The position numbers and the translations under genes were made by a program. A stretch of DNA of 64,000 bases from Botryllus schlosseri. Lineage: Eukaryota. Where the stretch lies: assembly GCA_051294905.1 (NCBI GenBank), contig CM119379.1, forward strand, positions 18,786,001-18,850,000, in the 5' to 3' direction. Below are positions 3,510 through 55,457 of the stretch, piece by piece. Below the pieces are notes generated by a model, which searched no databases, was not told the origin of the DNA, and saw only the letters and a program-made list of their open reading frames with translations. Numbering within the stretch: position 1 is the stretch's first letter; each line of letters starts with the position of its first letter.

Positions 3510-3953
3510 TCAGCAGACCTGCGCCGACATTGGACGACACGATGCCGATGGCACTTTAGCAGTGCTGTTCACGGCAGGCGCAGGCACAACGTTGCTCTGA
3601 ATCACCACGTTAGGACGGCTGTCAATCATCGGCGTTTTATCCACAAGTTCCGTCACGTCGCTCGGTTTATTTTGCGACGCGCCCGGTCTCGACAGCGCGT
3701 TACTCAAATCGTAGATATAGTTTATGGCGTGTTGCATTATCTCCAGTTCCGACACTTTCTCTTTCTGAACGTGCGATATCGTGGGCACCACCGTTCGCAA
3801 ATTTTCGATCAATTGGCTGACTACGGTTGATTCGTCTTCTTGTCGCCTGGTAATGGCGATGGACTTTCGGTAAATAGTGTGGAGCACTTCTGAACTTTCC
3901 TTGGGCCTGCAGGACACTGCGGTGCAAGGTTTGGGAGACTGAGCCTTCACCAT
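3510..3953 (-). CDS. Id: Id/Emc-type HLH protein lacking a basic domain (HLH gene 1, 147 aa)
   Basis: HLH core LIENLRTVVPTISHVQKEKVSELEIMQHAINYIYDL aligns with the Id/Emc HLH (e.g. YSKLKELVP..KVSKMEILQHVIDYILDL); acidic QEDE precedes helix 1. The true ATG is at 3953 (gaaaATGG); the track start at 3962 is a TTG. Symbol is family-level only, and the gene could instead be a tunicate-specific orphan bHLH. Confidence 0.92.
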   Translation of the reverse strand: MVKAQSPKPCTAVSCRPKESSEVLHTIYRKSIAITRRQEDESTVVSQLIENLRTVVPTISHVQKEKVSELEIMQHAINYIYDLSNALSRPGASQNKPSDVTELVDKTPMIDSRPNVVIQSNVVPAPAVNSTAKVPSASCRPMSAQVC

Positions 3954-4055
3954 TTTCAACAAACGCTGTTCTTCGGTTGGAAATCGCAGACCCGTTTAGT
4001 TGTCCTCAGCTCTACGGCAACATATGAATAATCAGTCTTGGTTCGATTCGAGAAC

Positions 4056-4065
4056 TATATAAATA
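4056..4065 (-). promoter_or_regulatory. TATA-like box of HLH gene 1
   Basis: Minus strand reads TATTTATATA about 105 nt upstream of the ATG; plus strand reads TATATAAATA. Confidence 0.55.
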
Positions 4066-6249
4066 GGCGAAATATTTACGGGGTGAAACTTTTTCTACAA
4101 CCTTACCCGACTGATCATCGCTAAGATTCCTTTCTCGTTCGACCGCGCCTGTGTCGAAATCTCTCGAAAGTAACCAATTACAACGCAGCAGGTATTGTTA
4201 AAGCGGGCGACAGACAGGCGCCTCGGTACAGCTGAGGTAACAATAGAGATATAAACAAGATAAATAGTGATTGGTGTGAGAAAGTGTGTGTTTGGTGTGA
4301 TGCGGGCTGCGATTTTGTGTGCGCTGAAATCGTTACGCAGGTAGGTATCATATCTGAAGATTCAATCCGACAAAAGACGGCATATCTTCATGCATAATAT
4401 ATTTTATTCTGTAGCCTTACAGCCGGGAGTGCTACCGGTAAACGCAAGGTGGCTTTGCCGGCAACTATTTGCACACCTGATTTTTCGCCGCGCATCGCTT
4501 ACAATTAACACCGGTTATTTGCGATCACAATACATGGTTATTACAAAGGTCATCAGGACAGGTATGACCGTCTTGGGCCTGCGTAAAAACCCTATAAAGC
4601 GGTTTCGCTTTATTCAGGTCTTACCGCTGTTTGCGCAGCTCTGGTTATCGTGAGGTATCCTAGCGTGTAATCGCTAATTTGTTTTTCAGCGGCTGTGCGG
4701 ACTTCAAGTTTAATCGATCATGGAAATTGTGGCGATAACAATATACTCGGTTGTTGAATGCGTTTCTGCACGAAATTGTATATGAATGAATATACGAATA
4801 TTGTGACCGCACAGATGTCATCAAATGTCACCATCAGCCGCGTCGCCGTGAGCGCTGATTGAGCTTATGTACAATATAAATATCAACATTCAAAGCTGCT
4901 TTTCGTAGTGAATTAAACCTGCGAGTTTCATGAATTCGTATGCTTGAGTCTCTGCTACTAAGGTACAGAATGACGCCTTGAACACGACACTGAATAGTCC
5001 GCGAAGGCGCATGATCATCGAATACTGATAAGAACTAGGTTCAATCTAGCTCCCCAGAGATACCACGGTGAGTGCGGCGGAGTAGATTTGTTCGATTGCA
5101 CTCATTAGATGTATTTAAACTGATAAAATTGTTATAGAGATGGTATCGCGACTTGCGGGTCACAAGGGATATAGATTACGACGGGGCCAGGTGCGGGAAT
5201 GATGGAGTGTTTGGGGTAAATGTCGGCGATCGCGGGAGTTACTTTCACATAATTTATACAGGATTGCCAAGCCGTAACAAAAAAGGAACTTCGACTAGGC
5301 TGTCTTGGTCTGACGGCGTCTGGTGCAAGCCTACCGCGTGATTCAAGCTGGCGGAATCTGATACATACCCTGTCGCCAGATCATTACCGGGTTTGATATA
5401 GCACAAATACAGACACCCGCTGAAGGATTTACGCATCGTACAGTAACTCCTCGTGGAAAACAACACCACAGGAACTCCCAAACCTACGTCACAAATCGTT
5501 TTTTCGTCACGCGAGAAATACTCATTCACGTCACATTTCTTTTATCGTCGTTTCAGATTTATAATGACCGTAAACAACCCTATAGCCGGGCACCGCATGC
5601 TTCGGGTGTATTTCCGCTCGTTCCCGATACCGCCTATGTATTTTCGTAAGATAACCATGCGGCCGCAGGTGCGTGGGCAGATTAAACGATCAGAATATTG
5701 AATGACTACCAAAATGAAACACACACCGCGCATAGCTTGTACAGATATACACCACTTTCTACATGTGTTATCGGAGGAGTACATCGGCGCGCGGGTCCAG
5801 AGGAAACGCCTTACCGCAAAGTACACACATTTGCGGGACATTATCGATACTAAAACCTGAAACTGCGGTGTTGACCTTAACGCGTCAGCGATTGTAGCGC
5901 TCAAAGTCTGAATGATTGCTGGATCCAATCAAAGCCCTTTTCTGGGGATTTGCAATAATTAGTTGGTAATGATTGAAATCGTTACATCACTAGTATCGGT
6001 GACTTTTACAATGTTCTTTCATTCGGCTGTGGCATTGTTTCTTGCAGACGGCCTGGCGGCTGGTAGATTTATATTACCGTTAAATGGAGGTTGCCGTCCC
6101 GGTTAGACCTAGTATTCATGTCGATAATCCGTACCTTTCAACAATAACTCTGAAATCTTCTCAATGTTTTGGTACCGTAGTTTATCACTAAAGCGGTAAT
6201 ACGGTAATTAGACCCCTTCCTTTGTGCGGCGCGGGCCCGCGACAGGTTC

Positions 6250-6265
6250 CAGACGAGTCGGCGCC
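6250..6265 (-). promoter_or_regulatory. BMP-responsive Smad1/5-Smad4 composite element (GGCGCC-N5-GTCTG)
   Basis: Plus strand CAGAC gagtc GGCGCC equals minus strand GGCGCC gactc GTCTG, an exact match to GRCGNC-N5-GTCTG, 2.3 kb upstream of an Id-like gene. Confidence 0.65.
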
Positions 6266-6524
6266 CTCACGGTAAACTTTGTGCGGCGCCAGCGCACCTG
6301 AGAACGGGACAATTCATTGTTGTATCAAACATTCGCGCAAAAGAAGTTATTGTACCGAGAGAAAATAAAGGTACTAAAACTATGTGTATATCCCGCGATC
6401 GGTGACAGGTAAGTTCAGCGACGAATCGACATTCGTCAGAAGGTCAAATATTGCCCGTGATTTGAGCAATTTATGATCATAACATTGAGACATAGATAAA
6501 CCAACCTTGTGGGTAAAACCTCAA

Positions 6525-6570
6525 TGCCCACTTCTAGGCTTTTTATAAGACACCGCTTACGCGGGTGACA
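6525..6570 (-). repeat. Fragment of the same SINE family
   Basis: gcccacttctaggctttttataagacaccgctt matches the 3' parts of copies 1 and 2. Confidence 0.55.
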
Positions 6571-9500
6571 CTATAGTGTGGTATGTGCTGGATTCGTGTG
6601 TCCACTAGCCATATGGTAACCATGCCTTCAATCACAAGGTTCTTTTCACTCACGTGAATGTGCGGTTACTTCTCATCCAAGGTTATCACTAATTAAAATC
6701 GTTGCTGACCGGGATAATCGCGAGTATCTGCGATGTTCGCGTACAAATATTAGTTAGGTCATTCGCGCACCGCTCAGTGGTATACCGACGCTTATCTGGC
6801 CGCGCGATTGCAAATTAGCAAAAATATTCGGTTGATCGGCGTGGGAATGAAGCTGCCAGGGCCATAGTGACGCTGCGCATGCGTTGTGCGTCTGGATGAT
6901 GCTAGGAATGTCAAGTAAGGATAAGGTCACCCGACGACTAATGACATCTTTGTTGTTATATCCTACACCCTCGCTACGGGGTTGCATGGGAACGAAATTA
7001 TGACATGAATTTGTGGCGCTATCGCGAATAAGGTATGCTAATTAGCGGCGGCAGTAAATTATGTCTGAGGACACCGAGCGTGCTGCGGTCAGTAAGTACT
7101 TATTTTTACTTCGAGTATACTCGAAGACGGCCTCTACTTGTGTATCCGCACCGGGGTTTTGGTGTACGGTACACCACCTTCGCCGCTATATCAAAATACT
7201 ACAAGGCTACAGCACATCCTTTATAAATGCAATAGTTGTCAATCGTGAAAATTACATTTAGGAGCGGATTTTGGTCACTCTGGTGAGTGACATTTTCATA
7301 ACCACAAAAATGAGGCTCTATGGTCGCTCTTTGCAATACCCGGAGCGAAGCTGTTCTATATTCGTGAAGATTGGTAATTCTGGCACTCGTCACCAACTAT
7401 TGAACATAATGCCGGCCCATTCCTATTCCTACACTGGCAGAATCTTTCAGCTCCACTTCTAATCCATCTGGAATAACATAGGTGATCATCCTGCCCACAT
7501 CTCTACTCGCACTGAATTGTAAACATACATGCATATTGTACGTATCGCAGCGTAATCATCAAGTAGAAGTGACGCGTGAGTACGTAACGAACTGCACCAC
7601 AAAGTTACCATTGAAATGTGGGGGTATGACGTATTATACATAAGGAATAACACACGATAAACATACCTATGCTCAAGTAATATGTCAGTACCATTGCCTG
7701 TCTTAAGACTTCGCGTCGTGAGCGTATATACAATTCTGTGGCAAAATATCTCGCAACGTAAACGAAAGGAGTTGATTGAAATCTTTAGTTTAGTAAGGAG
7801 GAATCGATGTATTCAATTATTCATATATATTGATGTACTGGTGGAATAGGATTTGCGTCATTTAAATATGCAATTCCAGGATTGCCGGGCGATATTCCAC
7901 ACGATTTACAGTTCCGAAAACTCGTTTTCCAGAACTACTCCCAACTTACGAGCATGCATGCATGTACAGGACATAAGGAATTTTAGCGACGTGTTTCCGT
8001 GATGTAGGCAAATATTTGATCACGTGCGCGAATCGTTGTGCACCTTGTTTCCCGTAACGTAACATTGCGTATTAAATCGACTGGTAGCGGGCAATCACCG
8101 GTGAAGTGTGTTTCAACTTTTAAATCACGGTGACGTAGACGGCCGCGGATTTACGCTGGACATAAACATACACCGACGATGCAATTTAGTTTACTGCAGC
8201 GTTTTGAACATATAACCACAGCAGCGCGTAACGGCATTGTAAATTACCATAAGCACTAAGTTCGTGATGAAACATCTTTAAATCGAATCAATATTTCCCG
8301 TCTTTACATCATTTCTTGGTCTGTAGTGGGTTTACCATCTCGCCATACTGGTGAATATAAAATGAACCTTACTCCCAATAATAAATTCCAATAAGATATC
8401 ACGTTTTGTTCCGAGCATTCTAATATCAAACGGGGATGATCCACAAAAATTTTTGATAAATCAAATCGTTGGTATTTCTGGATTACGGTTATTCTTTTTT
8501 GGTTATGATATTGAAGACCGACACGTAGCTAATCGACGGCCTCGCGGATGTCCTGAACTTATCGCGCGACGCATCGAAACAAATATCAACTTTCGCCCGC
8601 CAGGCCGGCGCCGGAACACCTGTGCGAAGTCGGGCTGTAATATGCCCATATCGCAAGCTAGCACTTACTCAAATTTGTGCGGTAAAGCTCATCAATTTAG
8701 ATATTTCTTCCTGAGATGTCTGTCTTCTTAAATCTGAATGCGGTGTGGTATATCATGCTTTTCCACGCGGATGAAAGTGGGCTTACGGTGAATAGCACCG
8801 CCAACAAGCAAAGATATTTATGTTGAGGTCATATTTTTCAACAATGCCGCTGCGCCACTAATATCCATCTGAGGTAGTGGAAACAAATGATGTCAAAAGG
8901 CACAAGTATATAGATGTATGCGTGTAGATGTAATCATATTTAGCGAAGATATGTCGGGAGTATATTACTACACTCTAAAACGCAATTTTGTCAAGTCTTT
9001 TGTTTGGCGTGACGCGATGAGAACGTAAGTATTCATTTGTACTAGCTTTTATGCCGCCCTGCTACCGCACCATGTCCAATGCGCTCGGTCATCCTAAATA
9101 CGATGGTACGATAAAGGTACGAATTACGATAAATCTTATTGCACCATGCCAATTACATAGATCAACAAGTCCATCTATCAGGGCCCGTGAAGCATCTCGA
9201 CCTGGACGCTTGGGGAAGCAATGCGCATTTGATGCCTCGCGCAATATTGATGCGCTACTTCCGCGTGTATTTGCCCGAGAATAACAGGCTGTGGCATTGA
9301 TGAAATTGCGAAAGAGTCAAAGAGTCATTCTATCAATGCGGCCAAAGACAGCACACACGCGAATGATTCTGGATTTCTATATTATAACATAGGTTGCCGT
9401 ATGTTAGACAATTGTGTGTTTAAAAAAAATTCTCCGTATACTTTCCAAGTATTTGGTCAGCAATATAGGAGTACTACATCCTAAAATATGCGCTTCAAGT

Positions 9501-11627: not shown

Positions 11628-11632
11628 AAAAA
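11628..11632 (-). terminator. RNA polymerase III terminator (T5) after tRNA-Ala
   Basis: Minus strand reads ...GTCTCCA AA TTTTT C, 2 nt after the discriminator base. Confidence 0.8.
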
Positions 11633-11634
11633 TT

Positions 11635-11706
11635 TGGAGACGCCGGGGATTGAACCCGGGACCTCACACATGCGAAGCGTGCGCTCTACCACTGAGCTAC
11701 GTCCCC
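11635..11706 (-). tRNA. tRNA-Ala (anticodon CGC)
   Basis: GGGGACGTAGCTCAGTGGTAGAGCGCACGCTTCGCATGTGTGAGGTCCCGGGTTCAATCCCCGGCGTCTCCA: 72 nt cloverleaf, G3:U70 Ala identity pair, anticodon loop TTCGCAT, intact A and B boxes. Confidence 0.97.
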
Positions 11707-11708
11707 CG

Positions 11709-11790
11709 CGACGAGGATGGGATTCGAACCCACGCGTGCAGAGCACAATGGATTAGCAGTCCATCGCCTTAACCACTCGGCCACCTCGTC
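11709..11790 (-). tRNA. tRNA-Ser (anticodon GCT)
   Basis: GACGAGGTGGCCGAGTGGTTAAGGCGATGGACTGCTAATCCATTGTGCTCTGCACGCGTGGGTTCGAATCCCATCCTCGTCG: 82 nt, long variable arm, anticodon loop CTGCTAA, typical metazoan Ser-GCT sequence. Confidence 0.97.
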
Positions 11791-12843: not shown

Positions 12844-13080
12844 TCACTCTTCCAGGACTTCGGTTAGCGTCTTGATGTAGTCGATTGTTCGCACCATGAT
12901 TTCGAAGTCGGTCAAAGTCGAACTGCGCTCTTCGGGAAATGGAACGATAGACTGCAGCTTTCTGTACATCCTTGCCATCTCTGTTTTGTAACGGCCGTCT
13001 GACTTCACGATGCCCCTTTTGGCAGTGTGCGTGGTCTTTGAAGCTGGCAGAATGCTGCTCTTGGAAATAGCCGTCTTCAT
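12844..13080 (-). CDS. Id: Minimal Emc/Id-type HLH protein (HLH gene 2, 78 aa)
   Basis: EMARMYRKLQSIVPFPEERSSTLTDFEIMVRTIDYIKTLTEVLE aligns with the Emc HLH (EMKMYLSKLKDLVPF..LTKLEIIQHVIDYICDLQTELE). No basic region. TATATAAA about 90 nt upstream and AATAAA about 280 nt downstream (12557-12563). Symbol is family-level only. Confidence 0.88.
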   Translation of the reverse strand: MKTAISKSSILPASKTTHTAKRGIVKSDGRYKTEMARMYRKLQSIVPFPEERSSTLTDFEIMVRTIDYIKTLTEVLEE

Positions 13081-13169
13081 TCTTTATCGAGTTAATACGT
13101 TGCAATGGCTACCAACAAATCTGCCAGAGTATCCGAGAGAGAATGTGACGCATCGCAGGAAATTCTGGA

Positions 13170-13177
13170 TTTATATA
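13170..13177 (-). promoter_or_regulatory. TATA box of HLH gene 2
   Basis: Minus strand TATATAAA about 90 nt upstream of the ATG at 13080. Confidence 0.7.
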
Positions 13178-16100: not shown

Positions 16101-17559
16101 CAGTAACCCCCGGAAGGAGTAGCTATAATTAAAGAGTGTGGCTGGGCACACACAAGATAACCGAATAAGTTAGGGCGGAGATGGCAAATAAAGTCACGAA
16201 GTCAAGCACAAACTGTCAAATACTCAAACATATCCGGAAGATACAATCCGTTGACAGACATTGCCAACCACCAGATGCCATGCTTGATCACGTGCTCATT
16301 TCAATATCATCGGCTCCATTGTAAAATCCGTGGTGTATAAGATGTATTCTCAACTTGAATATGTCACAATAGATTTGATTCAGCTGCTGCTATACGTAAA
16401 TGGAACTGATTTCGGATTCATTCGAACACAAAATCGCTTGACTTTAGCAATGAAGATGCAGCAGCGCCTGGAAAAAGTAAATTTTTATCACTGTAACCAC
16501 TGACAAGACAATCTATGCGCAGTGCAGCTAACTAATTTTAAGAGTAACAAACGCTTGCGAAGAGGACACGGGTTCTCGGCTCTTTCATCAAACCAATCAA
16601 GTCATCATATACCAACAAACACAAGGGTGACGGCTGCAGTTGCGGCCATTCAGAATTGCCTTTGCCCTTTTTAAATTGACCGGTACTCGCGTACTTCCCT
16701 CCCACACCCGATGACAATGAATGCTGTGCGCCGATAAATTTAGACGGTAATTAAATCAGGATATTAACCATTATGAGAAAAGGATGAGACCCCTATTCAC
16801 GTCCCTAATTAATTCGCCAATTAGAAGGAGCATTCATCTCAAAGAATGCGACGAGTATTGACCATGACCACCAGTGACCAGTCACAGGTGGTAATATCTT
16901 ATTGGCCGTGATATGGTGCATGCGCAGTTCCTCGTCCATACGGTACTTTTATGCCTTTTTATGATATTAGCTAAACGGCTTCCACTCTTTCCTTGGGCAA
17001 TTGTGGCATAGATAGGCCGCGCAGGCCCGCATTGATATTATAAAACTATTGACCGGTGCAACTTATACAATATGATTTATTTGTCACCCAAAGACATCTC
17101 CACTGCAAACGGTTTCATATGTTCATATGTTCAATGTTCATTGCATATGTTCTATTTCCATTGAGCCCCAGCCTTGGAGTCCTCAATTAGCAACATAAGA
17201 GAGGTGCCAGATGAAATCTATCAGAGTATATGTTGGAATTGTGGCCCTATATAAAGCTAAAGTGTTTGTTGAATAGCAGGTTATGGTCGCGCCTCTATGA
17301 ACCATCGGCAATACATGATGCGATGTCAGGATTACGCTGCAGGCGGGATTTTGGAATCCGTTATATTGCAGGCCCTTGCTAGCAGTAGCTGTTTCGGGCC
17401 CGTGCTCGAATCAACACAGGCGTTTAAGAGAACACACATCCACCTGCGATCGACTATCGAACGTAGGCTAAACTAGGCGAAGCAATCGTATGCGCAATAT
17501 ATCAAAGTGATTTAATAGACGACGTGCTTAGACCAACAGGCGCCGTAGCACCTGGATAA

Positions 17560-18150
17560 ATTGCGCCAGCTCTTCAATTCGTTATACGCTCGGCCTCGCG
17601 CGTATTAACCCGCCCGACGCGCCGCGTGAGTTATGATAGCTGAGCGATACGAGAGACCCGGACGGTCGGATGACGGACACAATCCGAAAAAACTTCCGAC
17701 CGCCCAAGCCTTTCATGAAACGCGATAGTCGAGGATAATTAAATAAGTTAGTGGCGCCGACGCCACTTACTCTCGCGATAAAACTGGGCTTTATTGACAA
17801 GTTAAGTATGTCGGAGAAAGTGTGAGAAGTGTGAACAATACGGAAACGAGAATGGAGAAGTTGTACGTAAAAGTTGGAAAGAGTGTGAGAATCCAGGAGT
17901 TCGCTACAAGCCCCGAGGCCGATCTTCCACTTTCTCTCGTTTAGTTATCTCTCGCGTTTGGTGGTAAAGTAAATCAACAAAGGACCAGACAAGCTGGCGC
18001 TCGCGCACCTGGGCGTATGATGCAAGGCGGGCACATTAAATCACGATCTTAGTTTGAGCAAACTGGCTCGGTCAACTCTGCATATACGAACCGTAATTAA
18101 GCCTCGTCCATCTCTGTCGGGCGCCGAATCATAGCGCCGCATGGCTAATC
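17560..18150. promoter_or_regulatory. Candidate enhancer (GC-rich Smad sites plus Su(H)-type sites)
   Basis: GGCGCC near 17754 and 18121, near-match composite CAGAC-aagct-GGCGCT at 17986-18001, GTGTGAGAA at 17820-17828 and 17883-17891. Confidence 0.4.
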
Positions 18151-20224: not shown

Positions 20225-20386
20225 GCCTACCTCTAGGCTTTTTAAGACACCGCTTGCACGGATAAGATGGCGGGGAGGAGCCTAGATAAACACTTAGGTA
20301 GGAATTCTGGAGTCGACCTCGGACGGACCCGAACCCGCAACCCATTGATGTTTCAGTTGTGGATTACACCACTACGTTATCCCGCC
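20225..20386 (-). mobile_element. tRNA-derived SINE, copy 2
   Basis: GGCGGGATAACGTAGTGGT...GGTTCGGGTCC head; shares aagacaccgcttg..agatggcg.ggaggagcctagataaa...ttaggtaggaattc with copy 1. Confidence 0.8.
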
Positions 20387-28700: not shown

Positions 28701-28800
28701 CTACGTTATGGCGATTCTATATTTTTTATATAGCAGACAGAGGTCACGAAATAACATCATATTAAGGAGTCATACCAACGAGCCCTATACAGGTTCCAAG

Positions 28801-34663: not shown

Positions 34664-35787
34664 ATTGCAAGTATAGGCAAAACCACCTGAGTATTTGGAA
34701 AAAGTAAAAGCACTCCAACTGACCATCTCCACCAGTTTCATTGGTAATTTATGGTACTGCTTTCCCTTGACTGGTATTTCTTACCATACCGCAATCCTTT
34801 TTTGGCTTGTAAGTCTTGACGGTGGTGTCCATTACGAAACATGGGACTGTCGATGAAAAAAAGACTTTAAATATACCGACAATGTAACCCCGCCATAAAC
34901 GCGAGTTGTCATATCTCGAAGACATCTAAAAATTAAACGATTCGCCCTCTCAATTCCAAACATTTTGCGAATTCCGCACCAACGGAGCACGGCGAAATGT
35001 CAAAAGTTCATAAAAAACACCTTTTGTACTCTAGCGGCAGTTAATTCCATCGCGGTCGTAAAACAATCAAAAGTCGGGCGGCGGTCGCCGGGTTTCGGGG
35101 CCCATACTCTTTGTCCTACCGCCACAATACCGCCATTTAAATATGCTTTTCGGACGCGCAAAAAGTCGGTGGATAATGTACAGCGGCTGCCATTTTACTG
35201 TCGCCATGCAAGTGGGACTCTGGCACCGCACTTTTAACGAGGCAAACAACGAAAGAGAGTTCGGGGTGAGATCCATTCACTCCCGATAAAGATACACTAA
35301 CCGACAAAACGAATGTCGCTTTTTGTTATGGTCGCGGACAAAGGAGACACCTCGCGCGCTGTCGCCAAGTTTGACGAAGCAGTGATAGGCCTCGCGAGCA
35401 AACATTTAGTATGGACTTATCCCACGGTCGCTGCGTAAACAAACTCTCGCGATTAAGCCGTTCCGACTCTCTCGCGCCGACTTTCCCATCCGCCTGCCAT
35501 CTGCCTGTCGCGGTCACGTGACGTGACGTAATCCCGGCTTGAACCAACCGAATTCCGATGGTGAGTTCGTTGATTTCGAGGTGACGGGATATTTTAAGAA
35601 CGCGCGGGTGGGATTTCGAGATACTGAACTGGGCGTGAGCCGATCCTGTCCAGGGGAGATATGTGACAGAGTACATCGAAGTACTCAGGTAGGTTTTTCC
35701 TACCTTCACTATTTACACGAGTGGATTTGTTTTTACATCACTTCCACTTCTATTTGAACAGTTTTTATACTCAAAACTACTAATGTT

Positions 35788-45755: not shown

Positions 45756-45762
45756 TATATAT
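45756..45762 (+). promoter_or_regulatory. TATA-like box of HLH gene 3 with adjacent Su(H)-type site
   Basis: TATATAT about 80 nt upstream of the ATG; TGTGAGAA at 45727-45734. Confidence 0.55.
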
Positions 45763-45836
45763 GCGAGCGTCGCACGCGAGACGCGACTGAATAGCACCTT
45801 TCAATAAGTTAAGCGCCGCGATTACTTCTTGGCATC

Positions 45837-46145
45837 ATGGGAAAAGCGGAAGGTACACCAACGCGGAAAAGTAAACGAAGAGTGAACAGTGAGATACTGG
45901 CCAAGTCCAACGTTGAAAACAGACGCGATGGCACGGATGAGGCTGATACACTGCGCAATCTGCTGAGGGAACTGGACGAGATCATACCCGACCGAATCGA
46001 CGGGAAAAACATACGCAGGGATCCAGCCGTTATCGTGGAGAGAGCGACGGATTACATCACGGAGCTTGAGAAGGAATTGGGCCGGGAGACGATTGCTTTG
46101 CTCCACAGCAATCCGGAATTTTATAAATTATTCAGCAAGAAATGA
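45837..46145 (+). CDS. Divergent Id-like HLH protein (HLH gene 3, 102 aa)
   Basis: LRNLLRELDEIIP-loop-DPAVIVERATDYITELEKEL shows the HLH hydrophobic pattern with the helix-1 Pro and helix-2 DYI..L. Kozak atcATGG; acidic residues rather than a basic region precede helix 1. Confidence 0.85.
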   Translation: MGKAEGTPTRKSKRRVNSEILAKSNVENRRDGTDEADTLRNLLRELDEIIPDRIDGKNIRRDPAVIVERATDYITELEKELGRETIALLHSNPEFYKLFSKK

Positions 46146-48625
46146 TGCGATCCCTGTACGGAGGAATTTATCGAGGATGTCATTCGCGAGATTGAATCTG
46201 TTGCTGTCCTGCTTGGCTTGGAGGAGAAGTTTGTACAGACATATCTTCGATCTGGATGAACTCAAGTCGTGCGATATTCTCGCGGGGATGCGTATTCGGA
46301 GCCGGAAAATTACAGTTTGTACTGGAGTTTTTCACTATAGGAAATTTGTTGCCAGGTCGTGCTTATGCAAATATGAATTTTTAAATAGTGTTGAATCACG
46401 GAAGAGCCACATATATTTGAATCTTCTTGTGTTGATGCTATGGCACTTTTCTGTGGTTTCGAACGATGTAGAAGCATCTAGTAAAACAACTCGTTTCTGA
46501 AAAACCATCATCGTTCAGAGCGCATGTAAGTAGTTACAACGGGAAAATGATAACATTTTTTGTTGGATTATAATAATTTTCGTGCCGCAAATTTGACTAG
46601 AGTAATTCAACTTCTACTTCATTTATATGCCGCATCTTGAAGCGAGTTTAGGTTATCTCCTCATCTGACAAGATAGCATGTAGGTCCGTCGTTACCGAAA
46701 GGTTACGGCTAGCAAATTTCCATTTTATTTGATCTCGTGCACATATAATTGAGATCGTCAGATTGAATACAACGCTGCTTGCAAATTAGTTCACAACAGC
46801 CCGACATTAAATCAATCACGGGAGCCTCAAGGCAAAGAAAATTATAACGAAATGGATTATACGCTGGAAAATAAGCTTTGCGGTGCACTTATTTCGCACA
46901 AAAATCGGTCTCGGCAATCTTCCTGTTTGTTGCTGATTGATCGTATATGTAAGAGTACGCTGTGTTACCCCCAGAGGCTATAACTTTATTTGCCGGAACA
47001 AACTGCATGTAGCCGTTGCTGAAATGAGTTCAAACGTTCCTGTGTATGTGTACAATTGTACATAGCTGTTGACAATATGGCGGTGGTGACGGCTGGTAGC
47101 GATTTCGCTGCGTAGCAATATTCATTCCTAGATCCTGTTTCTTAAATTAAAACCCATGTAAAGTGTACACGCACAGGAACCAATTCGTAAGAATATTTTC
47201 CCTTTTAAGCATAGTATAACATTGCTATCAAGATGAATTATTTCTGATTTTTATATAATCATAATCATATAACTTGCTATACAGTTCAACATATCTTTAT
47301 AAACAAGCTCGTGTAATCTTTACATTAACAATTAATGACGATTTCTATATGTAGCTGTTACCTCAAATAAAAACAAAATTTTGAATAAACCAATGCTGGT
47401 GTGTTTTCTCGCGTGTTCAGTGTCCACTTCAGTCCTACTTGTGTATGCGAATGTGTAAATTTATAAGATGATTGCAGGATCGAATTCCGACGCGTTACCA
47501 TTACTGCTGGGAAAAAAGATGCGTGTCCTAAACATCATGCTTGGCAATTTTCCACCAGGAAAACATACTGTGCTAATGCTGAGTTGTACTTGGCTATCTA
47601 CGTGTCGTACTATCAACCGTGCATGTTAGCTTGAGCTGGAAGAGTTCTGCATCGATAGGAAATGACTTAGCGCTGACAAAAGAAACTCCGCCGAATATAG
47701 CTAAACAGTGAACAATATGTTTGACGCTCATTGAACATGAAGTACTTGAAGGACTATATATGCTATGATATGTATTCTGGATTATTAGGTACTATATAGA
47801 CGATAAAAATTCGTATTGACTCAGGGTGCATAGATATCAAACCTTGTAGATATTCATGTCTCGACCGGTCAAATTCCTAAATTTTGTTCGAGTGACCTCA
47901 GTGTATTCATGATTAAGTGACAGAAGTAAATCATCATTTCGCTGTCTCAAATTTTCGGCGTTACTAAATTTTCGTTCCGGCCTTTTGCGGGGGTAATGTG
48001 GATGTGATGCGTATGTCGATGTCGAAAAATCGCAAACTACGTGTTACGCGTTTTGGCCTGTGAAATTAAGATCACGACTGGCTTGTATCCCGCACGGCAC
48101 TGATGCTTCCTTCCCGCATCTTCCATTATGACATGATGGCTAGACCAATAAGTCTGCTTGTCGATGGAATTAAGTGGCAGTTTGAACGTGATATAAGACC
48201 AAAAGCTAGGCATATTCGTGGATTTAACATATAACGATCATTTTGATATACGCGAACGACGCACCTGCGTAATATTTGCCTGGATCTATCGCGTACTCCG
48301 CAATGCTCGCTTCTTAATCCATTTTCCGTGACTGATCATAAAGAAAACGCGACGTAAGACAACCGCGAACTCTCCAAGCTGTAATACCTCGTCGACAAGA
48401 CAGAGAGCCGTCTACTAAATCCAGCTGTTGATCATACAAGAAGATCTGTGTTTTTTCAATACGGATGAGCTAGGAATGAAAAATTATGGACTCCTGTTAC
48501 GCTGTAAGTTCTACCTAGTACCTACGCTGTATAACATGGTACATGCTGCACCGGGGCCTACGATAACTTACGTAGGCCCCGGCTGCACATTACACACATC
48601 CATTCTCCCGATGTGTCTTCTCTAC

Positions 48626-48898
48626 TAGACATGGGGTAATCGTGATTATAATTGATTACATTCGAAAAAACTGAAGTAATGGTAACCATAATCGATTAGT
48701 TTGCCTATATCTAATCGAATTCTTGCAAGAGGATGATCACTAAACTTTTTAGTTTCACAGGGACTATATGACATAAAGTAAACATCAAGGAATAGTACGT
48801 TGTATCAAGTAATAGGCTGTAAAAACGTGTAATCGTAATCGCGCGTTTCACAAGTAATCGTAATTGAGTACATTGATGCAATTGCCGCCCCATGTCTC
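48626..48898. mobile_element. Short, older derivative of the 21608-23602 family
   Basis: Ends TAGACATGGGGTAATC / CCCCATGTCT with GATTAC/GTAATC motifs; TSD only 5/8 matching. Confidence 0.7.
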
Positions 48899-49929
48899 CT
48901 CGATACTGGTATTCCTTATTTGAAGAGTACCAGACGCCCGGATGTACTGTGAACGCGATTGTGGTATCAGATATTCAGTATATGTGCTTGACGTACCGTT
49001 CACTTATGCGCAGAGAGATGCACGGAACAGTTTTCACTCTTCGAGTACGTGTAGAAAACGTTGAAGCATTTAAGTTTCAGCTATACGTCATTGCGTGTCA
49101 CTGTAAATTGTAATGTTTGACTTGTTGGATTTAGCTATTGAATGTTCAAAACAAATTTTACGCTTTCTACCGGGGATCAATGTTTATTCACTGGGTAGGG
49201 TCCTGCCAAATCTGTTTCACCGGTGTCGTGGTAATCGAATTTCTTCAATATAATTTACCGTTACTAGGCGAGGGAATTTAACATCCGCTGACGGCTCGAA
49301 ATACAAGGTATTTGCAAGTCTTATATCTTGGAAGCGAGTGTGCGTCAAAGTACGTGACGTTATCTATTTGTCTCTGTAGTAGTGCAAAGGTATTGACTTC
49401 TGTAGTCATATTGTTGGAATGTTGTAAATTTTTGTTGCCTAGAATGATTACTCAGGAATATATAATGGAGAACAGCAAAACAGTGCAATAAAAGACTGCA
49501 ATGCGGAAATAATTTTCCAAAAAAAAAAACAGACAGCAAAGCGATAACCCATAATAAAAGTCAAATACCAAACGCCAAACCCCCATTGGTCTGCAAACCC
49601 GACCCAAGGCATTTCAGCAAAACTCAGTGTCGCCGACTGTAACAAAACCCATAGCCTGAAAAGAGTGACCAAGTGATAATGTAGTTTTCGGCAGTCTCGC
49701 ATGGGCGTCAAATGGCGAATGACCTCAAATTTAAACGACAATGAATCAATCAAGCGATATATATTCATACGGTTCAGGCACTGTCGTGCTTGGCCGGGGT
49801 TTTTGAAATTCTATAGCTTTCACGCTATTGCGTCACACCTAACATTGAGATGCAGCTAATCAACCACACAGCTCTTTGTTAAGCAAATAAAGAGATAACC
49901 AATAACCATACTAGAAATGGCTTTATAGC

Positions 49930-50130
49930 ATGTTTTTGAAATCACTCCTTTACATTTTGTGCAATACTTGATAAAAGTTGCAGTAAAAAAATAGCATTAA
50001 AAAATAGAAAAAGTTGCAATATGTAATTCCTTCAAACAGCCTAAAACATCATAGGCCTACTACATAAACCATGAGTGTTTAGGAACCTCCCGGAAGCTGT
50101 AATAGTTGCACAATTAAGTTACAAAAAAGT
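49930..50130. repeat. Fragment of the 36573-37438 family
   Basis: aaaagttgca...aaacagcctaaaaca...ggaagctgtaa matches 36600-36780 in reverse; limits approximate. Confidence 0.55.
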
Positions 50131-50245
50131 TCGCTATTGATTAGTAATCAATGCTTTGACTCCTACAGATTGAATAATGTAGCTTAAGTCAAACAATCAT
50201 ACTTTTGAAGAGCTTCTTGGAGGTAATGAACTTCAGTATACAATT

Positions 50246-50448
50246 GAATAGTATATTCATATTGAATTGAAACCCGAATATTTTCGGCTGACACTCGTCA
50301 GGGGTAACCGTCAGCAACTAGTAGAGAATAAGAAAGAACATTGAATATCATATATCGACTGTTGATTGATTGTCGATTGCTGACGATTACCCCTGACGAG
50401 TGTCAGCCGAAAATACTCAGGTTTCATTTCAATATCAATATACTATTC
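50246..50448. repeat. Palindromic MITE-like family, best copy
   Basis: 72-bp arms 50246-50317 and 50377-50448 with 5 mismatches and a ~60-nt spacer; related pieces at ~28905-28955, 32301-32530, 33060-33150, 35788-35950 and 44605-44660. Confidence 0.8.
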
Positions 50449-50907
50449 CATCATACTTTTGCTCACCACGACCACACGAGCTATTGTAAATGCTCCCATA
50501 CGCTAACGTATGAAATAAAAGCTTGCAGTATATTTCAAAACAAACGGAATATTATAAGACTTGTAAAAATGGCCTAATGACATTTTTAACAAGCTGTGCT
50601 ATGGTGGCCTCGTGGAATTTAGTTTGTTTGATAGGGCATATTCCGCTCACAATTTCGCATGCGTCTCCGCATGAATGCACACTGCACTATAATTTAGTAG
50701 CTTTTCAGCAGCAAGTAGCTACTTAGCTTGTAATTCATATACTTCGTAGTTTGTATAAAATCTCTCTAAAGTCTAACTCTAAACCGAGAGAGTGTACGGC
50801 GACAATTTGGTATCAGACTTTTGTCCATGTTGATAGCAGCAATATCTTCCTGTCTCTGTACTGCCATCAAGTGCATCAAAGTTTTGTCACTGACGTCATC
50901 AACTACT

Positions 50908-51520
50908 ATTATCATCATCATCATCATTGGTTTATTAGCAATTTTATCAGTTCAATACACCACAAAAATGCGATACAATGAAAAGATAGGAAGGCGTCGA
51001 AGCGACTTGGAGTAGTCTATGGAATGAGACACCCACCTTGGCCTATAGGCGAGGTAAAGAGGAGGCATGCACATTTGCACACTGAATGAAAAGTAAAGAA
51101 GATAGTATAGAAAAAGGCAAGCACAAGAAAAAGATGGCATGTCATGGAAGTCAAGATCGATAGGTCAGTCGTGTTCCGGTAATCTTGACGATGGACTAAT
51201 ATTCATTTAGCAGTAATTCCTTGTATTGCGACTTGAATGTAGACAATCTGGACATGCTCGTCGACTGTCGGATGACCGGCGGGATACTGTTCCACACATC
51301 GGGTGCAGCATATTTGATGGGGCGATGATCTTTACGGTCAATCATATGATATTTGGACGAAGCGGACGCGCGTGTGTTGTACTTGTGCGCCTTTGATTCC
51401 GAGGTAAAAAAAGTCATTGAAATATTCGGGACAACGACCGCAGTGGAACTGATACATAAACTTGGCGACTTCTAGTTTCCGCATATCATCTATGTTTAGG
51501 ACACCGAATCTCGGAATCGA
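50908..51520 (-). mobile_element. 5'-truncated CR1/L2-group LINE (ORF2 C-terminus, 3' UTR and tail)
   Basis: GVLNIDDMRKLEVAKFMYQFHCGRCPEYFNDFF, frameshift, then TSESKAHKYNTR...IKYAAPDVWNSIPPVIRQSTS..STFKSQYKELLLNEY*, typical of the L2/CR1-group ORF2 end. AATAAA (50931-50936) is followed by an (ATG)n tail. Confidence 0.88.
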
Positions 51521-52363
51521 TTGTCTCACCGCGATCAAAAAAGGCGACAGGTGCTTATCGTGCGAGAAATTCTTCGAGTATAAGGAAAAGTCCCCTTTCC
51601 CCGATACAAATTAAATCAACAACAGTCGCAATCGAATGAAATTATTATACCGATTTGGCGATTGCCCTTTGAAAATTATATTCATATATCGCACACTGAG
51701 TAAATATCAGTAGCCTACACAGGATCAGTTCTCGTGTCGTGTTTTGATTCCAACAAGTCAAGAGATCGCATGGTGCTACTGGGAAGACATTGGTGTTTTG
51801 CACCCACTTCAAAAGGAAGCATCAATAGTGAACAGAATGGATTTACAAATTAGGAAAGTTGATTTCCTATATCTGAAATCAACAGAGACAATTTTAAAAA
51901 TTATGACCACATAAGCAGCAATGCAATGGCGACAAGAATGGGTCAAAAGAACATATGTATACAGCATTCACAAAGGATGAGGACATAGGCCCTTGGGCAG
52001 CGGATATCCATACAGCGAGAAAAGTCATTCCTATTCCTCTAATTTATGTTTCCTTTGGAGTTGCTTGTATTGAGATATTATTTTGGCTGTATTTTTGGAA
52101 ATCTGATATTTCACACTGTGTGAAACCGCAACATTTACATGAAATAAATTGAAGGTCCGAAGGAATTGACATTGAGGCGAAATACTCTCTTTCCGTCCTC
52201 AAATTTCGTTGTTTATGGATTGTAATGTCATAGCCGGTCGTTAAGATAAATTATTTGCCCGTTCGAAATTCTCATTCATGCTATGCCGCCCGGGACAGAT
52301 GTACTTGATTACTATATGTAATGTAAACGCAGGAAAACGCGTCAGAAATCTGACACTATAAAG

Positions 52364-53354
52364 CAGTGGTTCCCAACCTTTTTTAATGTCGGAGCAGCAT
52401 TTCATATTTCAGAGTACATCTGGGGCCGCACGAACACACTAATTTGGAAACACAAAAATTATAAAGTTTCAAAGCGCGTACCAAAGAATAGCAACACTAA
52501 CAAGTAAAAAACATATCGATGTAATGTCCAACTTGGCATAGGCTTTGAGCTTCAAGAAGTTTGCCAAAGCAAGGCGTAATTGCAGAGAATGCAGTACGCA
52601 GTAGCTACTTGATGTGGTCATCGGTCGATCGACTGCGATGTTGATTTTTGATTCTGGCCAGTTTGCTAAAGTGCTTCACATGCATAAGTTGATCACAATA
52701 GAGAATCGTTTTTCTGCGCATTGGTTACCAAGTTGGGATATTTTGCCTCTGGAATTTAACTCCAGAACTCAAGTAAAGTCTTCACGTTTTAATAATTGCT
52801 TGATCTTGATATCTGACTGCATGTCTAGCAACTCAAGTTGAAAATTACTAGGGGCAGTGGCCACAGCATATGCAATAGGATTTGAAAACATTTTCATAGT
52901 GGGCAAGAAAGCATTCATTGCGCCGATGCGGCGGTTGAACTCATCAACGAAGTTGCTGATAAGCCCGCTGTATGCATCAAATGATCCGCTGGTTTGATGG
53001 TCAAATACCGTTGGAAAATGTGTTGTAACACCACCTGCACTTGAGTCTGTTGGGGAGCTGACTTAAATTTGAGTGCCGATCCGAGCGCATTTGAGTGTGA
53101 GTATACTTTTTGACGTGAGTTGAGTATCGAAATCGTTGACTACGATTCGCTGCTGAGTAGAGAATCGCTACTCGACAGCAGAGGGTGTGGCGGGTTGGCG
53201 TCTGAGCGGGTTTAACCCCTGTTGAGGAATTGATCTTCACCCTTAATTATAAACTCCAGACTCCAAGCCAAGCGAGGGTAATTTTTGAATATGAATTTAT
53301 TTTTCTTGCTGTAAATTTATTTTCTTTATCATTTTGTGGGATTGGGAATCACTG
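52364..53354 (-). mobile_element. hAT Charlie/SPIN-type deletion derivative, 991 bp
   Basis: TIR CAGTGGTTCCCAA / TTGGGAATCACTG; TSD CTATAAAG / TTATAAAG; contains a transposase relic. Confidence 0.9.
52521..53040 (-). pseudogene. Degraded Charlie-type (GTF2IRD2-like) hAT transposase C-terminus
   Basis: Manual translation gives THFPT..YSGLISNFVDEFNRR..FSNP..APSNFQLELLDMQSD, then LEFWS*IPEAKYPNL..STYACE, then KNQHRSRSTDDHIK*LLRTAFSAITP..KL..CQVGH, i.e. the hAT dimerisation region with stops and frameshifts. Confidence 0.88.
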
Positions 53355-53705
53355 TTATAAAGTATGGCACAAGGCATGCATCAACAATACTGTTAGGTCA
53401 CTGCAAGTGGAAAACACAGAGCTACAGAAGATCGCAGAACTATTCATCGTGACGTAAACACATTCTTTATAGTACCATAGCGGGAATACATAATTATGGA
53501 TGAAGCATTTCGTTCTATTTTGTTGCTACTACTACCGTACCGTATTTCCAAGCGACGTGTGCATAAAATAACCGGAAAATATAATCCATATAGCCAGTGC
53601 ATGTATCAAAATATTGAATATTATTCTCTGTGCTAACGTCGCTCAACGATCTCACGAACATCTTTGAGTCCACACGTATCGGTCATATCCCCAAAATGGT
53701 ATAGA

Positions 53706-54201
53706 CAGGGTTGCATTTAAAACAAACGGTACTTTAAAACGCATTATACAGTGTTTTAAACCAATGCCTTTGTGATTTTTTTTTCAAACGTCGAATAATT
53801 GCGCCATAATTGTGTAAATACTTTCGAATAACATGTAGTACAAGCCTACGGACGATTTGCACCCAATATAGTCGACGTATACGATATGGAATGGCTTGAA
53901 CCCTCGAAATCGTCGTTGGTTCGACAGTTACAGTTAAAAGATATAGATAAATTGGCACGGAATGGATGTTGTGGTGATAATGACCGCCGACCGTGAAAAT
54001 GCTGCATAACGATGTAGTACTGGTTAACGATATTTTTGGTCTGTTTATCACAGTGGTCGGAAGACTTTTTCGTCGAAGGAGCCCTATTTTCAATGACCTT
54101 CCACTATGACGTCACAATTAGAAATTCGTGACGGCATGGCAAGAAAAATATGTTTGGAACATGTTTGATTTAAATCGATTTTTGTTTTAAATGCAACCCT
54201 A
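53706..54201. mobile_element. hAT MITE, TAGGGTTGCATTTAAAAC family, copy 3
   Basis: TIR CAGGGTTGCATTTAAAACAAA / TTTGTTTTAAATGCAACCCTA; TSD GGTATAGA / GCTAGAGA (6/8); same interior as copies 1 and 2. Confidence 0.87.
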
Positions 54202-55038
54202 GCTAGAGACAGTAGTCAAGTATCAAAATACTTTCATTAATTAAAATCAATTTTAGTCATCACATTGACGGACAGAATACCAGATCTTTCGTGACTTGTA
54301 GAAGTGAATTATACTTTTTGAACTAAATTGCAAGAAGTAGTCAAAGTATTCGTTAGTCAAGTTAAGAAAAATTGCTTTCAACATCCATAGCAGAAAAGCA
54401 GATTTGCTCATCATTACTTTGCGAACATTGCGCAATTGATACCTGAAAATACATCCATTCAATCGTATTCTTAGAGACCTGCAAATAAATAGGGCAAGGA
54501 TTATAAAGGAGGTAATTTGGACCGACAGATTTGAACACAGTGATAATGGTGCCAAACTCGTAAATAAACAAGTGTTCTGTTACCGACACTTTTATAATAG
54601 TGTATGTTGAGAAAGCTAATCCCCATATGTAATGGATAAATAGTCCCGCGAGTGACTTACTTTTGATAACCGGCCGGCATGAAATAGGTCGATTTATCGT
54701 CTGTTGTTGGGTGTTATACAAAGCCCATTGGAATTTATTCAAAATTAGTCAAGGGAAAACTATGTTTCTTCTCTCTCTGGCAGATTATAGACAAGTGTTT
54801 GTCTCTAAATCTCTGAGATTAATTCCCATGCGTCTGCCACCTGCCGCCGGCCGAGATGTACCGACATGCGAGGCAAGACGCGTGAAAAAGTACCAATAAT
54901 CTTACAAAATATTCGAGAATTCGCAGTTACTGGACGCCCGCGATTATCCACGATGGACCGACTGAACTAATTTCCGAAACTGAAATTCGAGAGAATCCGT
55001 CTTTAAACGCAAGAAAAAAAGAAGACTGAGCACCAGGC

Positions 55039-55046
55039 TATATAAA
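55039..55046 (+). promoter_or_regulatory. TATA box of HLH gene 4
   Basis: TATATAAA about 90 nt upstream of the ATG at 55134. Confidence 0.75.
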
Positions 55047-55133
55047 CGGGTGGCCACCGCTCGCTCATCCACACATCACAGTTACCAAGCTTAGACGCAA
55101 GAAGCAATACAAGAATACAAAAAGATATCCGCA

Positions 55134-55457
55134 ATGGGGAAGACTGTAACTTGCTATCAGGCTGCTGTTAAATGCAGAGTGCTTCCGTACGCAAAGTCAG
55201 CTACTAAGAAATCAATGCCGGTCAAACTGTCAGCCGTCCAGCCGGAGAGGAGCGAAGAATGCGAGATCCTGCGTTTAATTTCGGAACTACAAACCGTACT
55301 ACCTGCGTCTTCGTTTACGAAGGCGCCATCAACCGTTGACACCGTTGAAAGCGCAATCGCTTATATTTGCCAGCTCGAACAGGAAGCGGGCGAAGAAGAT
55401 TTAAAACGACTTCGTCAAAGCGTGAACCTGACTGACTGCTTGTCGGAAAATGTCTGA
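55134..55457 (+). CDS. Divergent Id-like HLH protein (HLH gene 4, 107 aa)
   Basis: ILRLISELQTVLP-loop-STVDTVESAIAYICQLEQE fits the HLH pattern. TATA box, Kozak gcaATGG, AU-rich 3' UTR and AATAAA at 55683-55688. Confidence 0.87.
   Translation: MGKTVTCYQAAVKCRVLPYAKSATKKSMPVKLSAVQPERSEECEILRLISELQTVLPASSFTKAPSTVDTVESAIAYICQLEQEAGEEDLKRLRQSVNLTDCLSENV

What the first reader, a model, noticed from the sequence alone, without database searches (positions are those of the whole stretch)
3510..55457. Cluster of four tiny, intronless, highly diverged Id/Emc-type HLH genes in two divergent pairs around a shared ~33 kb gene desert
Seen: the only convincing protein genes in 64 kb are four 78-147 aa HLH ORFs, each single-exon with a TATA-like box and good Kozak context. 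Genes 1-2 are on the minus strand, genes 3-4 on the plus strand, and there is no recognisable gene between 13080 and 45837. They share little outside the HLH. Established: Id/Emc proteins are dominant-negative partners of E-proteins and classic BMP and Notch outputs; vertebrate Id1-4 are dispersed rather than clustered. Inference: an old, lineage-specific tandem complex of HLH antagonists sharing a regulatory landscape, analogous in layout to the Drosophila E(spl) or achaete-scute complexes. From memory, Ciona has two Id genes plus tunicate-specific orphan bHLH genes, so some members may be their orthologues; I cannot verify this.
Basis: partly seen in the sequence, partly recalled or inferred. 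Interest (0 to 1): 0.82.

Follow-up and report, generated by a model that had tools for sequence, protein, structure and literature searches.

The report
Sea-squirt cluster of Id-type HLH genes
Four tiny single-exon genes in this 64-kb stretch are real, conserved helix-loop-helix proteins without a DNA-binding arm, part of the sea-squirt expansion of Id regulators that was already reported for Phallusia and Ciona, so this is a solid but only moderately new find.

Summary
Four ORFs (147, 78, 102 and 107 aa) sit at the stated coordinates. All match the Pfam HLH profile from about position 15 onward, so none has a basic region, and no other HLH ORF is in the window. RNA evidence covers genes 1, 2 and 4. 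Gene 4 is an unspliced ~0.6-kb mRNA whose 5' end lies 32 nt after its TATA box. Genes 1, 3 and 4 have orthologues in other species. Gene 1 is a clear Id. Gene 2 is a short Id-like copy. Genes 3 and 4 form a second subtype with an MGK start and a conserved C-terminal tail. This subtype joins Id only through profile comparison via gene 4. Conserved BMP-response elements (GGCGCC with GTCT, often preceded by CAGGTG-N4) lie upstream of genes 1 and 2. One of them lies inside the "desert" and is shared with a relative. The kind is known. A 2022 paper names six Id paralogues in Phallusia, five on one scaffold, several BMP-induced. In Ciona, Id.a, Id.b and Bhlh-tun1 have neighbouring gene-model numbers on chromosome 7. 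This scan had already noted three more Id genes and the same composite motif in adjacent DNA of this genome. Verdict: new member of a known kind.

The parts
3510..3953 (-). g1: 147-aa canonical Id-type HLH gene, single coding exon
   Evidence: Pfam HLH 26.8 bits. Best solved-structure hits are ID-2 and ID-1, E=4e-4. Four orthologues at 43-62% identity with invariant MVKAQSPK start, HLH and ...VC end. Held by RNA-type runs X1-X14.
4056..4061 (-). g1 TATA-like box, 108 nt before the ATG
4201..4225 (-). g1 promoter-proximal conserved block CGAGGCGCCTGTCTGTCGCCCGCTT (GGCGCC next to GTCTG)
   Evidence: 24 of 25 bases identical to L001 6850-6874, at the same distance before the orthologue's ATG, in flanks that otherwise do not align.
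6251..6300 (-). Distal module upstream of g1: CAGGTG-N4-GGCGCC (6285-6300) and GGCGCC-N5-GTCT (6251-6265)
   Evidence: 0.00 and 0.05 matches expected in shuffles
8607..8622 (-). Third CAGGTG-N4-GGCGCC site, between g1 and g2
12844..13080 (-). g2: 78-aa short Id-like HLH gene that ends 5 residues after helix 2
   Evidence: Pfam HLH 17.3 bits, below the cut-off. Best solved-structure hits ID-3 and ID-1, E=0.25. hhalign 91.5% to the g1 family. Atlas features point to HLH, score 0.90. Held by RNA-type runs at share 0.39-0.72. TATA box at 13172-13177.
17530..17563 (-). Conserved non-coding element in the gap: CAATTTAT-C-CAGGTG-CTAC-GGCGCC-N5-GTCT
   Evidence: Near-identical core in relative locus L002 1486-1518; the flanks do not align.
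45837..46145 (+). g3: 102-aa HLH-only gene of the second subtype, with a nearly invariant 22-aa C-terminal tail
   Evidence: Pfam HLH 15.8 bits. Four orthologues at 48-68% identity. Tail dN 0.04-0.09 against dS 1.0-2.1. AlphaFold model shows helix-loop-helix plus two short C-terminal helices, pLDDT 64.8. TATA box at 45756-45761.
46807..46863 (+). Conserved block in the presumed g3 3'UTR
   Evidence: 75% identity over 57 nt with L003-L005, at a matching distance after the stop codon.
55071..55700 (+). g4 transcript: unspliced, about 0.6 kb; 3' end approximate
   Evidence: Raw RNA reads of X24 cover only 54964-55751, at depth 14-45 in each direction. Template-switch-oligo tails mark 5' ends at 55070/55071. 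No joints were seen. TATATAA lies at 55039, 32 nt before that end, and AATAAA at 55683.
55134..55457 (+). g4: 107-aa HLH-only gene of the second subtype, bridging g1 and g3
   Evidence: Pfam HLH 23.6 bits. Orthologues P0009-P0011 at 34-59% identity. hhalign 97% to the g1 family, including the N-terminal AV-x-C motif, and 97.9% to the g3 family, including the tail.

Best explanation
The window holds four expressed or conserved members of the ascidian-specific expansion of Id (group D, HLH-only) genes. The layout is g1 and g2 on the minus strand, a 33-kb gap, then g3 and g4 on the plus strand. Each gene has its own TATA promoter and one coding exon. Shown: each protein has a helix-loop-helix dimerisation domain, and the usual DNA-contacting basic stretch is replaced by neutral or acidic residues. 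Inferred from what is established for Id/Emc proteins: they pair with E-proteins or tissue-specific bHLH activators and form dimers that cannot bind E-boxes. There are two subtypes. g1 (full length) and g2 (truncated) are Id proper and carry Smad-type BMP-response elements upstream, so they are probably direct BMP targets like Phallusia Id.b, Id.c and Id.e. g3 and g4 are a derived subtype with an MGK start and a C-terminal helical tail. In g3 this tail is under stronger purifying selection than the HLH itself, which suggests an added partner-binding function.
For: HLH hits without a basic region in all four proteins. Residues before helix 1 are mostly neutral or acidic in g1, g3 and g4. g1 matches Id2/Id1 and g2 matches Id3/Id1 among solved structures. 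hhalign chain: g2 to g1 91.5%, g1 to g4 97%, g4 to g3 97.9%. Orthologues with saturated dS exist for g1, g3 and g4. RNA: g1 and g2 are in RNA-type runs that lack the silent flanks of g4, and g4 is in raw reads with tagged 5' ends. BMP-response motifs are far above chance and conserved in two relatives' loci. Literature: six Id paralogues in Phallusia, five on scaffold S104, with Id.b, Id.c and Id.e induced by BMP2 and Id.b and Id.e lost (Id.c reduced) under DMH1 (PMC9238270). In Ciona, Id.a, Id.b and Bhlh-tun1 have neighbouring gene-model numbers on chromosome 7 (PMC7693978).
Against: g3 and g4 do not pick out Id among solved structures; USF, Pho4 and Max-E47 come first and are not significant. 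The direct g1-g3 profile link is weak at 34%. g2 and g3 fall below Pfam's cut-off. No orthologue search was possible for g2, and the relative's 7 kb upstream of its g1 orthologue has none. g2 keeps 5 K/R in the 13 residues before helix 1. The Ciona cluster member Bhlh-tun1 is reported to bind E-boxes in vitro (PMC7693978), so not every member need be a passive inhibitor. g4 shows 7 non-synonymous to 1 synonymous variants in RNA reads. g3 expression in this species is untested. No dimerisation or BMP response was measured.
Confidence: 0.75

Rival explanations
1. g3 and g4 are an independent orphan HLH class, for example a basic-region-less derivative of a group B bHLH. They merely lie beside the true Id genes and act mainly through their conserved C-terminal tail rather than as Id-like inhibitors.
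For: Best solved-structure and fold hits are USF, TFE3/MITF and Pho4, not Id. The g1-g3 profile probability is only 34%. The tail is the most constrained part of g3.
Against: All those hits are non-significant. The g4 family aligns with the Id/g1 family at 97% over 76 columns, including an N-terminal AV-x-C motif outside the HLH. It also shares the tail with g3. The genes are linked to Id genes in this genome and in a relative (L002 carries two subtype-2 genes). By my own reading of a probe sequence, Phallusia Id.f, which the authors place in the Id family, has the g4-like YIC helix 2.
Confidence: 0.15
2. One or two members, g2 and/or g4, are decaying duplicates that are still transcribed but no longer needed.
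For: g2 is truncated right after helix 2 and has no known orthologue. g4 has 7 non-synonymous and 1 synonymous variants in RNA reads. g4 orthologues are only 34-59% identical.
Against: Both ORFs are intact with complete HLH helices. Most g4 variants lie outside the helices; the one inside helix 2 is rare and seen in one read direction only. g4 orthologues keep intact ORFs although dS is saturated. Both genes have TATA promoters and RNA support.
Confidence: 0.07
3. Some members bind DNA, as reported for Ciona Bhlh-tun1, and work as small transcription factors rather than as antagonists.
For: Ciona Bhlh-tun1 lies next to Id.b and is reported to bind E-boxes in vitro (PMC7693978). g2 has 5 K/R before helix 1, and g3 has a K/R-rich N-terminus.
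Against: No protein here matches Pfam HLH profile positions 1-13. By my hand alignment to the MyoD basic region (recalled from memory), the positions of the conserved E and R residues hold D/G in g2 and acidic residues in g3 and g4.
Confidence: 0.08

Closest known systems
Phallusia mammillata Id.a-Id.f (PMC9238270, BMC Biol 2022)
   Same: Several small Id-type paralogues, five on one scaffold (S104 gene models g03263-g03276 plus one unannotated). Both a canonical subtype (Id.e, by my reading of the probe: MVK start, S-V-A-I-R, IIQHAIFYIHDL) and a YIC-helix subtype (Id.f) are present. Id.b, Id.c and Id.e respond to BMP, which fits the BMP-response elements found here.
   Different: Different species. 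Id.d primers and the start of the Id.e probe are absent from the window. One-to-one orthology of g1-g4 to Id.a-f is not established. That paper does not discuss the cluster layout, the g3-type tail or the cis-elements.
Ciona robusta Id.a / Id.b / Bhlh-tun1 on chromosome 7 (PMC7693978)
   Same: Linked Id genes with a neighbouring tunicate-specific small bHLH (KY.Chr7.1153, 1157, 1158). Proteins are of similar small size (Bhlh-tun1 is 139 aa).
   Different: The Ciona locus is compact: about 9 kb between the two Id genes, with three gene models the authors call unrelated. Here the genes are spread over 52 kb with a 33-kb gap. Bhlh-tun1 is reported to bind E-boxes, whereas none of the four proteins here has a recognisable basic region.
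Vertebrate ID1-ID4 and Drosophila Emc (bHLH group D)
   Same: HLH without a basic region. g1 shares helix 2 with ID1/ID2. From memory, it also shares the MK-start, S-x-A-I-S-R and C-terminal Cys motifs. GGCGCC/GTCT Smad elements are known from vertebrate Id1-type BMP-response elements (established knowledge).
   Different: Vertebrate ID genes are dispersed on four chromosomes and have an intron. Here the genes are clustered and have single-exon coding regions. g3/g4 have diverged beyond direct recognition as Id.
Drosophila E(spl) and achaete-scute complexes
   Same: A layout analogy only: several small HLH genes of one family spread through a region poor in other genes.
   Different: Those genes encode DNA-binding bHLH proteins (with Orange domain and WRPW in E(spl)). 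None of the four proteins here ends in WRPW, and none gave a Pfam hit other than HLH-type models. Shared enhancers are shown there and are untested here.

Membership tests
Id/Emc (bHLH group D) | Helix-loop-helix dimerisation domain | tested here: met
   Pfam PF00010 hits all four: g1 and g4 above the cut-off, g2 and g3 below it. This is backed by hhalign, Atlas features and the AlphaFold model of g3.
Id/Emc (bHLH group D) | No basic DNA-binding region before helix 1 | tested here: met
   All Pfam alignments start at profile position 14-17. The 13 residues before helix 1 hold 2 K/R against 3-4 D/E in g1, g3 and g4. g2 is less clear, with 5 K/R but Gly and Asp at key positions.
Id/Emc (bHLH group D) | Sequence closer to Id than to any other bHLH class | tested here: inconclusive
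   g1: yes, ID-2/ID-1 are the best hits at E=4e-4. g2: ID-3/ID-1 are best but at E=0.25, with hhalign 91.5% to the g1 family. g3 and g4: the best hits are USF, Pho4 and Max-E47 and are not significant; the only link is g4 to g1 at 97%. No reference set was available for a tree.
Id/Emc (bHLH group D) | Heterodimerises with E-proteins and blocks their DNA binding | not testable with these tools
   Needs a binding assay and a gel-shift assay.
Ascidian Id paralogue cluster (Phallusia Id.a-f; Ciona Id.a, Id.b, Bhlh-tun1) | Several linked small HLH genes, including a canonical Id | tested here: met
   Four in the window. Three more are noted just beyond it (not tested by me). Relative locus L002 carries two subtype-2 genes 4.6 kb apart.
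Ascidian Id paralogue cluster (Phallusia Id.a-f; Ciona Id.a, Id.b, Bhlh-tun1) | One-to-one orthology to the named paralogues | not tested
   Only two Phallusia probe sequences were readable.
Ascidian Id paralogue cluster (Phallusia Id.a-f; Ciona Id.a, Id.b, Bhlh-tun1) | BMP-dependent expression | tested here: inconclusive
   Cis-motifs only. GGCGCC-N5-GTCT occurs twice (0.05 expected) and CAGGTG-N4-GGCGCC three times (0.00 expected). Both are conserved in L001 and L002. No expression test was done.
Hairy/E(spl) (bHLH-Orange) | Basic region, Orange domain and C-terminal WRPW | tested here: not met
   No basic region and no Pfam hit other than HLH-type models. The C-termini are ...SAQVC...EVLEE...LFSKK and ...LSENV.

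The most novel reading that the evidence does not exclude
g3 and g4 define an unrecognised, Id-derived tunicate subfamily. Its key feature is a new C-terminal helical motif (consensus ELGRETIALLHSNPEFYKLF in g3 orthologues) that is more constrained than the HLH. The whole complex of about seven genes would be run by shared, deeply conserved composite elements (homeobox-like site, E-box, Smad site) in the gene-poor gaps. That would make it a true 'Id complex' comparable to E(spl)-C.
Probability: 0.3. Interest if true: 0.55.

Novelty: new member of a known kind. Interest (0 to 1): 0.4.

Why it matters
Id proteins are central switches between proliferation and differentiation and are classic BMP targets. 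Vertebrates keep four dispersed copies, whereas ascidians built a linked array of very small, fast-evolving copies. This locus gives clean gene models, a mapped promoter, two recognisable subtypes and short conserved Smad/E-box elements. That makes it a compact system for asking how duplicated HLH antagonists divide their labour, and how BMP input is wired into each copy. It also flags tiny genes that automatic annotation tends to miss; one Phallusia copy was listed as unannotated.

Tried and rejected
- Exact-sequence look-ups of all four proteins found nothing on record.
- A word-based homologue search for g4 found nothing. The exhaustive HMMER search was needed.
- No homologue search was left for g2. 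The Atlas gave only generic HLH clusters.
- Profiles of the g3 and g4 families against solved structures did not single out Id. Foldseek on the g3 model gave only non-significant bHLH hits of many classes.
- I noticed a possible match between the g3 tail and the stretch after helix 2 of vertebrate Id2/Id4. It comes from memory only, no search supported it, and I make no claim from it.
- Phallusia Id.d primers and the start of the Id.e probe do not occur in the window, so those genes are not here or the species differs.
- Gene-wide dN/dS is not computable because dS is saturated.
- The relative's contig L001 has no g2-like ORF in the 7 kb upstream of its g1 orthologue.
- The 20 longest ORFs of the gap have no Pfam domain. 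Shorter exons were not examined.
- Formal alignment of the Phallusia Id.e and Id.f probes with g1-g4 was left out, because those long strings have no reference and may not be typed in.


Full report
**Observation**

ORF length alone proves nothing here. The window has 42 stop-to-stop ORFs of 100 aa or more.

The content is what counts:
- All four match Pfam HLH (PF00010). g1 scores 26.8 and g4 23.6 bits, above the curated cut-off of 20.7. g2 scores 17.3 and g3 15.8 bits, below it.
- Every alignment starts at profile position 14-17, so the basic region is not matched.
- An HMM built from the four proteins and their homologues, run with filters off on every six-frame ORF of 35 aa or more, recovers these four (E from 1e-36 to 7e-22) and nothing else (next E = 2.2).
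- Each gene has TATATA 81-108 nt before its ATG and a purine at -3.

**Are they real genes?**

- g1 has four homologues at 43-62% identity. The MVKAQSPK start, the HLH and the C-terminal ...VC are invariant.
- g3 has four homologues at 48-68% identity.
- g4 has three at 34-59% identity, found only by the exhaustive HMMER search.
- Synonymous sites between these species are saturated, so intact ORFs at this distance mean selection.

RNA evidence:
- Raw RNA reads of run X24 cover 54964-55751 at depth 14-45 in each read direction, and the flanking bins are empty.
- No joints were seen in those reads.
- Their 5' loose ends at 55070/55071 carry the template-switching oligo. This puts the mRNA start 32 nt after the TATATAA at 55039.
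- An AATAAA lies at 55683. g4 is therefore an unspliced mRNA of about 0.6 kb.
- The older runs X1 and X6 hold g4 but not its silent flanks, so they behave as RNA.
- X1 and X6 also hold g1 (shares 0.79 and 0.78) and g2 (0.72 and 0.61); across all the older RNA-type runs the shares are 0.43-0.79 for g1 and 0.39-0.72 for g2.
Its orthologue sits on 1.6-1.7-kb contigs from three samples that begin 33-69 nt before the ATG. A 57-nt block in the matching 3'UTR position is conserved in the window at 46807-46863.

**What class are they?**

- g1 is a plain Id. Its best solved-structure matches are ID-2 and ID-1, with E = 4e-4 over helix 1 to helix 2.
- g2 is closest to ID-3/ID-1, but weakly (E = 0.25). 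It aligns with the g1 family at 91.5% probability. It stops five residues after helix 2.
- g3 and g4 do not find Id directly. USF, TFE3, Pho4 and a Max-E47 chimera come first, all non-significant. Foldseek on the g3 model lists bHLH proteins of many classes without significance.

Profile-profile comparison gives a chain:

| Comparison | hhalign probability | Aligned stretch |
|---|---|---|
| g1 family vs g4 family | 97% | 76 columns, including an N-terminal AVSCR/AVKCR motif outside the HLH |
| g3 family vs g4 family | 97.9% | 71 columns, including the C-terminal tail |
| g1 family vs g3 family | 34% | HLH only |

So g4 bridges the two ends. I read g3/g4 as a derived subtype of the same family. 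This is an inference, not a demonstrated clade.

The residues where the basic region should be are neutral or acidic in g1, g3 and g4. They are mixed in g2.

**The g3 tail**

- In g3 orthologues the last 22 residues (LGRETIALLHSNPEFYKLFSKK) are almost invariant.
- For the tail, dN is 0.04-0.09 against dS of 1.0-2.1. For the HLH, dN is 0.3-0.46. For the N-terminus, dN is about 0.77.
- The AlphaFold model places two short helices there (83-91 and 93-99). Mean pLDDT is 64.8, so confidence is moderate.
- A weaker form of the motif is present in g4's relatives and in both subtype-2 genes of relative locus L002.

**Cis-elements**

- The Smad-type BMP-response pattern GGCGCC-N5-GTCT occurs twice, at 6251-6265 and 17530-17544 (0.05 expected).
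- CAGGTG-N4-GGCGCC occurs three times, all on the minus strand, at 6285, 8607 and 17539 (0.00 expected).
- All of these lie upstream of g1 or g2.
- A 25-nt block, CGAGGCGCCTGTCTGTCGCC(C/T)GCTT, differs at a single base between the window (4201-4225) and the relative's g1 orthologue. It sits about 250-290 nt before the ATG, in flanks that otherwise do not align.
- The element at 17530-17563 (CAATTTATCCAGGTGCTACGGCGCCTGTTGGTCT) has a near-identical counterpart in L002 beside two subtype-2 genes.
- The "desert" therefore holds at least one deeply conserved candidate enhancer.
My result extends it to this window and to two loci of relatives.

**The gap**

Between 13080 and 45837 there is no tRNA or Rfam family. 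The 20 longest ORFs have no Pfam domain. There is no further HLH ORF. I could not test the gap for transcripts.

**Comparison with what is known**

- PMC9238270 reports six Id paralogues in Phallusia mammillata:
  - Id.a is the former Bhlhtun1/Orphan bHLH-1.
  - Id.a to Id.e all lie on scaffold S104, and one of them is an unannotated model.
  - Five of the six are expressed in the peripheral nervous system.
  - Id.b, Id.c and Id.e are induced by BMP2. DMH1 abolishes Id.b and Id.e and reduces Id.c.
- PMC7693978 places Ciona Id.a, Id.b and Bhlh-tun1 at KY.Chr7.1153, 1157 and 1158.
- The expansion and its BMP link are therefore already published. The layout, the two subtypes, the tail and the conserved elements are not discussed there.
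- By my own reading of the probe sequences in the supplement, Id.e resembles g1 and Id.f has the g4-like YIC helix 2. I did not enter those long strings into any tool.
- Other agents of this scan call the genome Botryllus schlosseri. I did not test that.

**Mechanism**

- Shown: HLH present, basic region absent, genes transcribed or conserved, Smad-type elements conserved.
- Inferred from the established behaviour of Id/Emc: the proteins form heterodimers with E-proteins or class II bHLH factors, and those dimers cannot bind DNA. g1 and g2 would be under direct BMP-Smad control. g3 and g4 would add a tail-mediated interaction.
- Caveats:
  - Ciona Bhlh-tun1 reportedly binds E-boxes in vitro.
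  - g2 has no known orthologue.
  - g4 shows 7 non-synonymous to 1 synonymous variants in RNA reads, mostly outside the helices.

**Verdict**

This is a real and well-supported gene cluster. It is a new member of a known kind (the ascidian Id paralogue array), with some new detail. Interest is moderate.

Noticed in passing
window 11635-11790 (-): tRNA-Ala(CGC) and tRNA-Ser(GCT) lie one to two bases apart, between g1 and g2. They are the only RNA genes found in the window.
   Followed up: partly
window 6285-6300, 8607-8622, 17539-17554 (-); L002 1495-1510: The composite CAGGTG-N4-GGCGCC motif occurs three times in the window (0.00 expected) and once in a relative's locus.
   Followed up: partly
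L002 5202-5537 (-) and 10172-10501 (+): A relative carries two subtype-2 (g3/g4-like) HLH genes, transcribed divergently and 4.6 kb apart. Both have the ...LL..NP... tail.
   Followed up: partly
window 35479-35521; L002 3681-3705 and 7172-7217: A short element in the gap matches two places of the relative's locus at 81-96% identity. It is probably a small interspersed repeat shared between the species.
   Followed up: no
window 53979-54372 and 56737-57327: Patches with high contig word-depth in RNA runs and many loose ends, flanking g4. They look like transcribed repeat fragments rather than genes.
   Followed up: no
window 55197-55444: Eight variants appear in g4 coding sequence in X24 reads, and seven change the amino acid (S22P, T24N, K31N, Q36K, A64T, C79F, S104L). 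The helix-2 change C79F is rare and seen in one read direction only.
   Followed up: partly
window 63594-63701: A 42-nt tandem repeat of about 2.3-2.7 copies.
   Followed up: no
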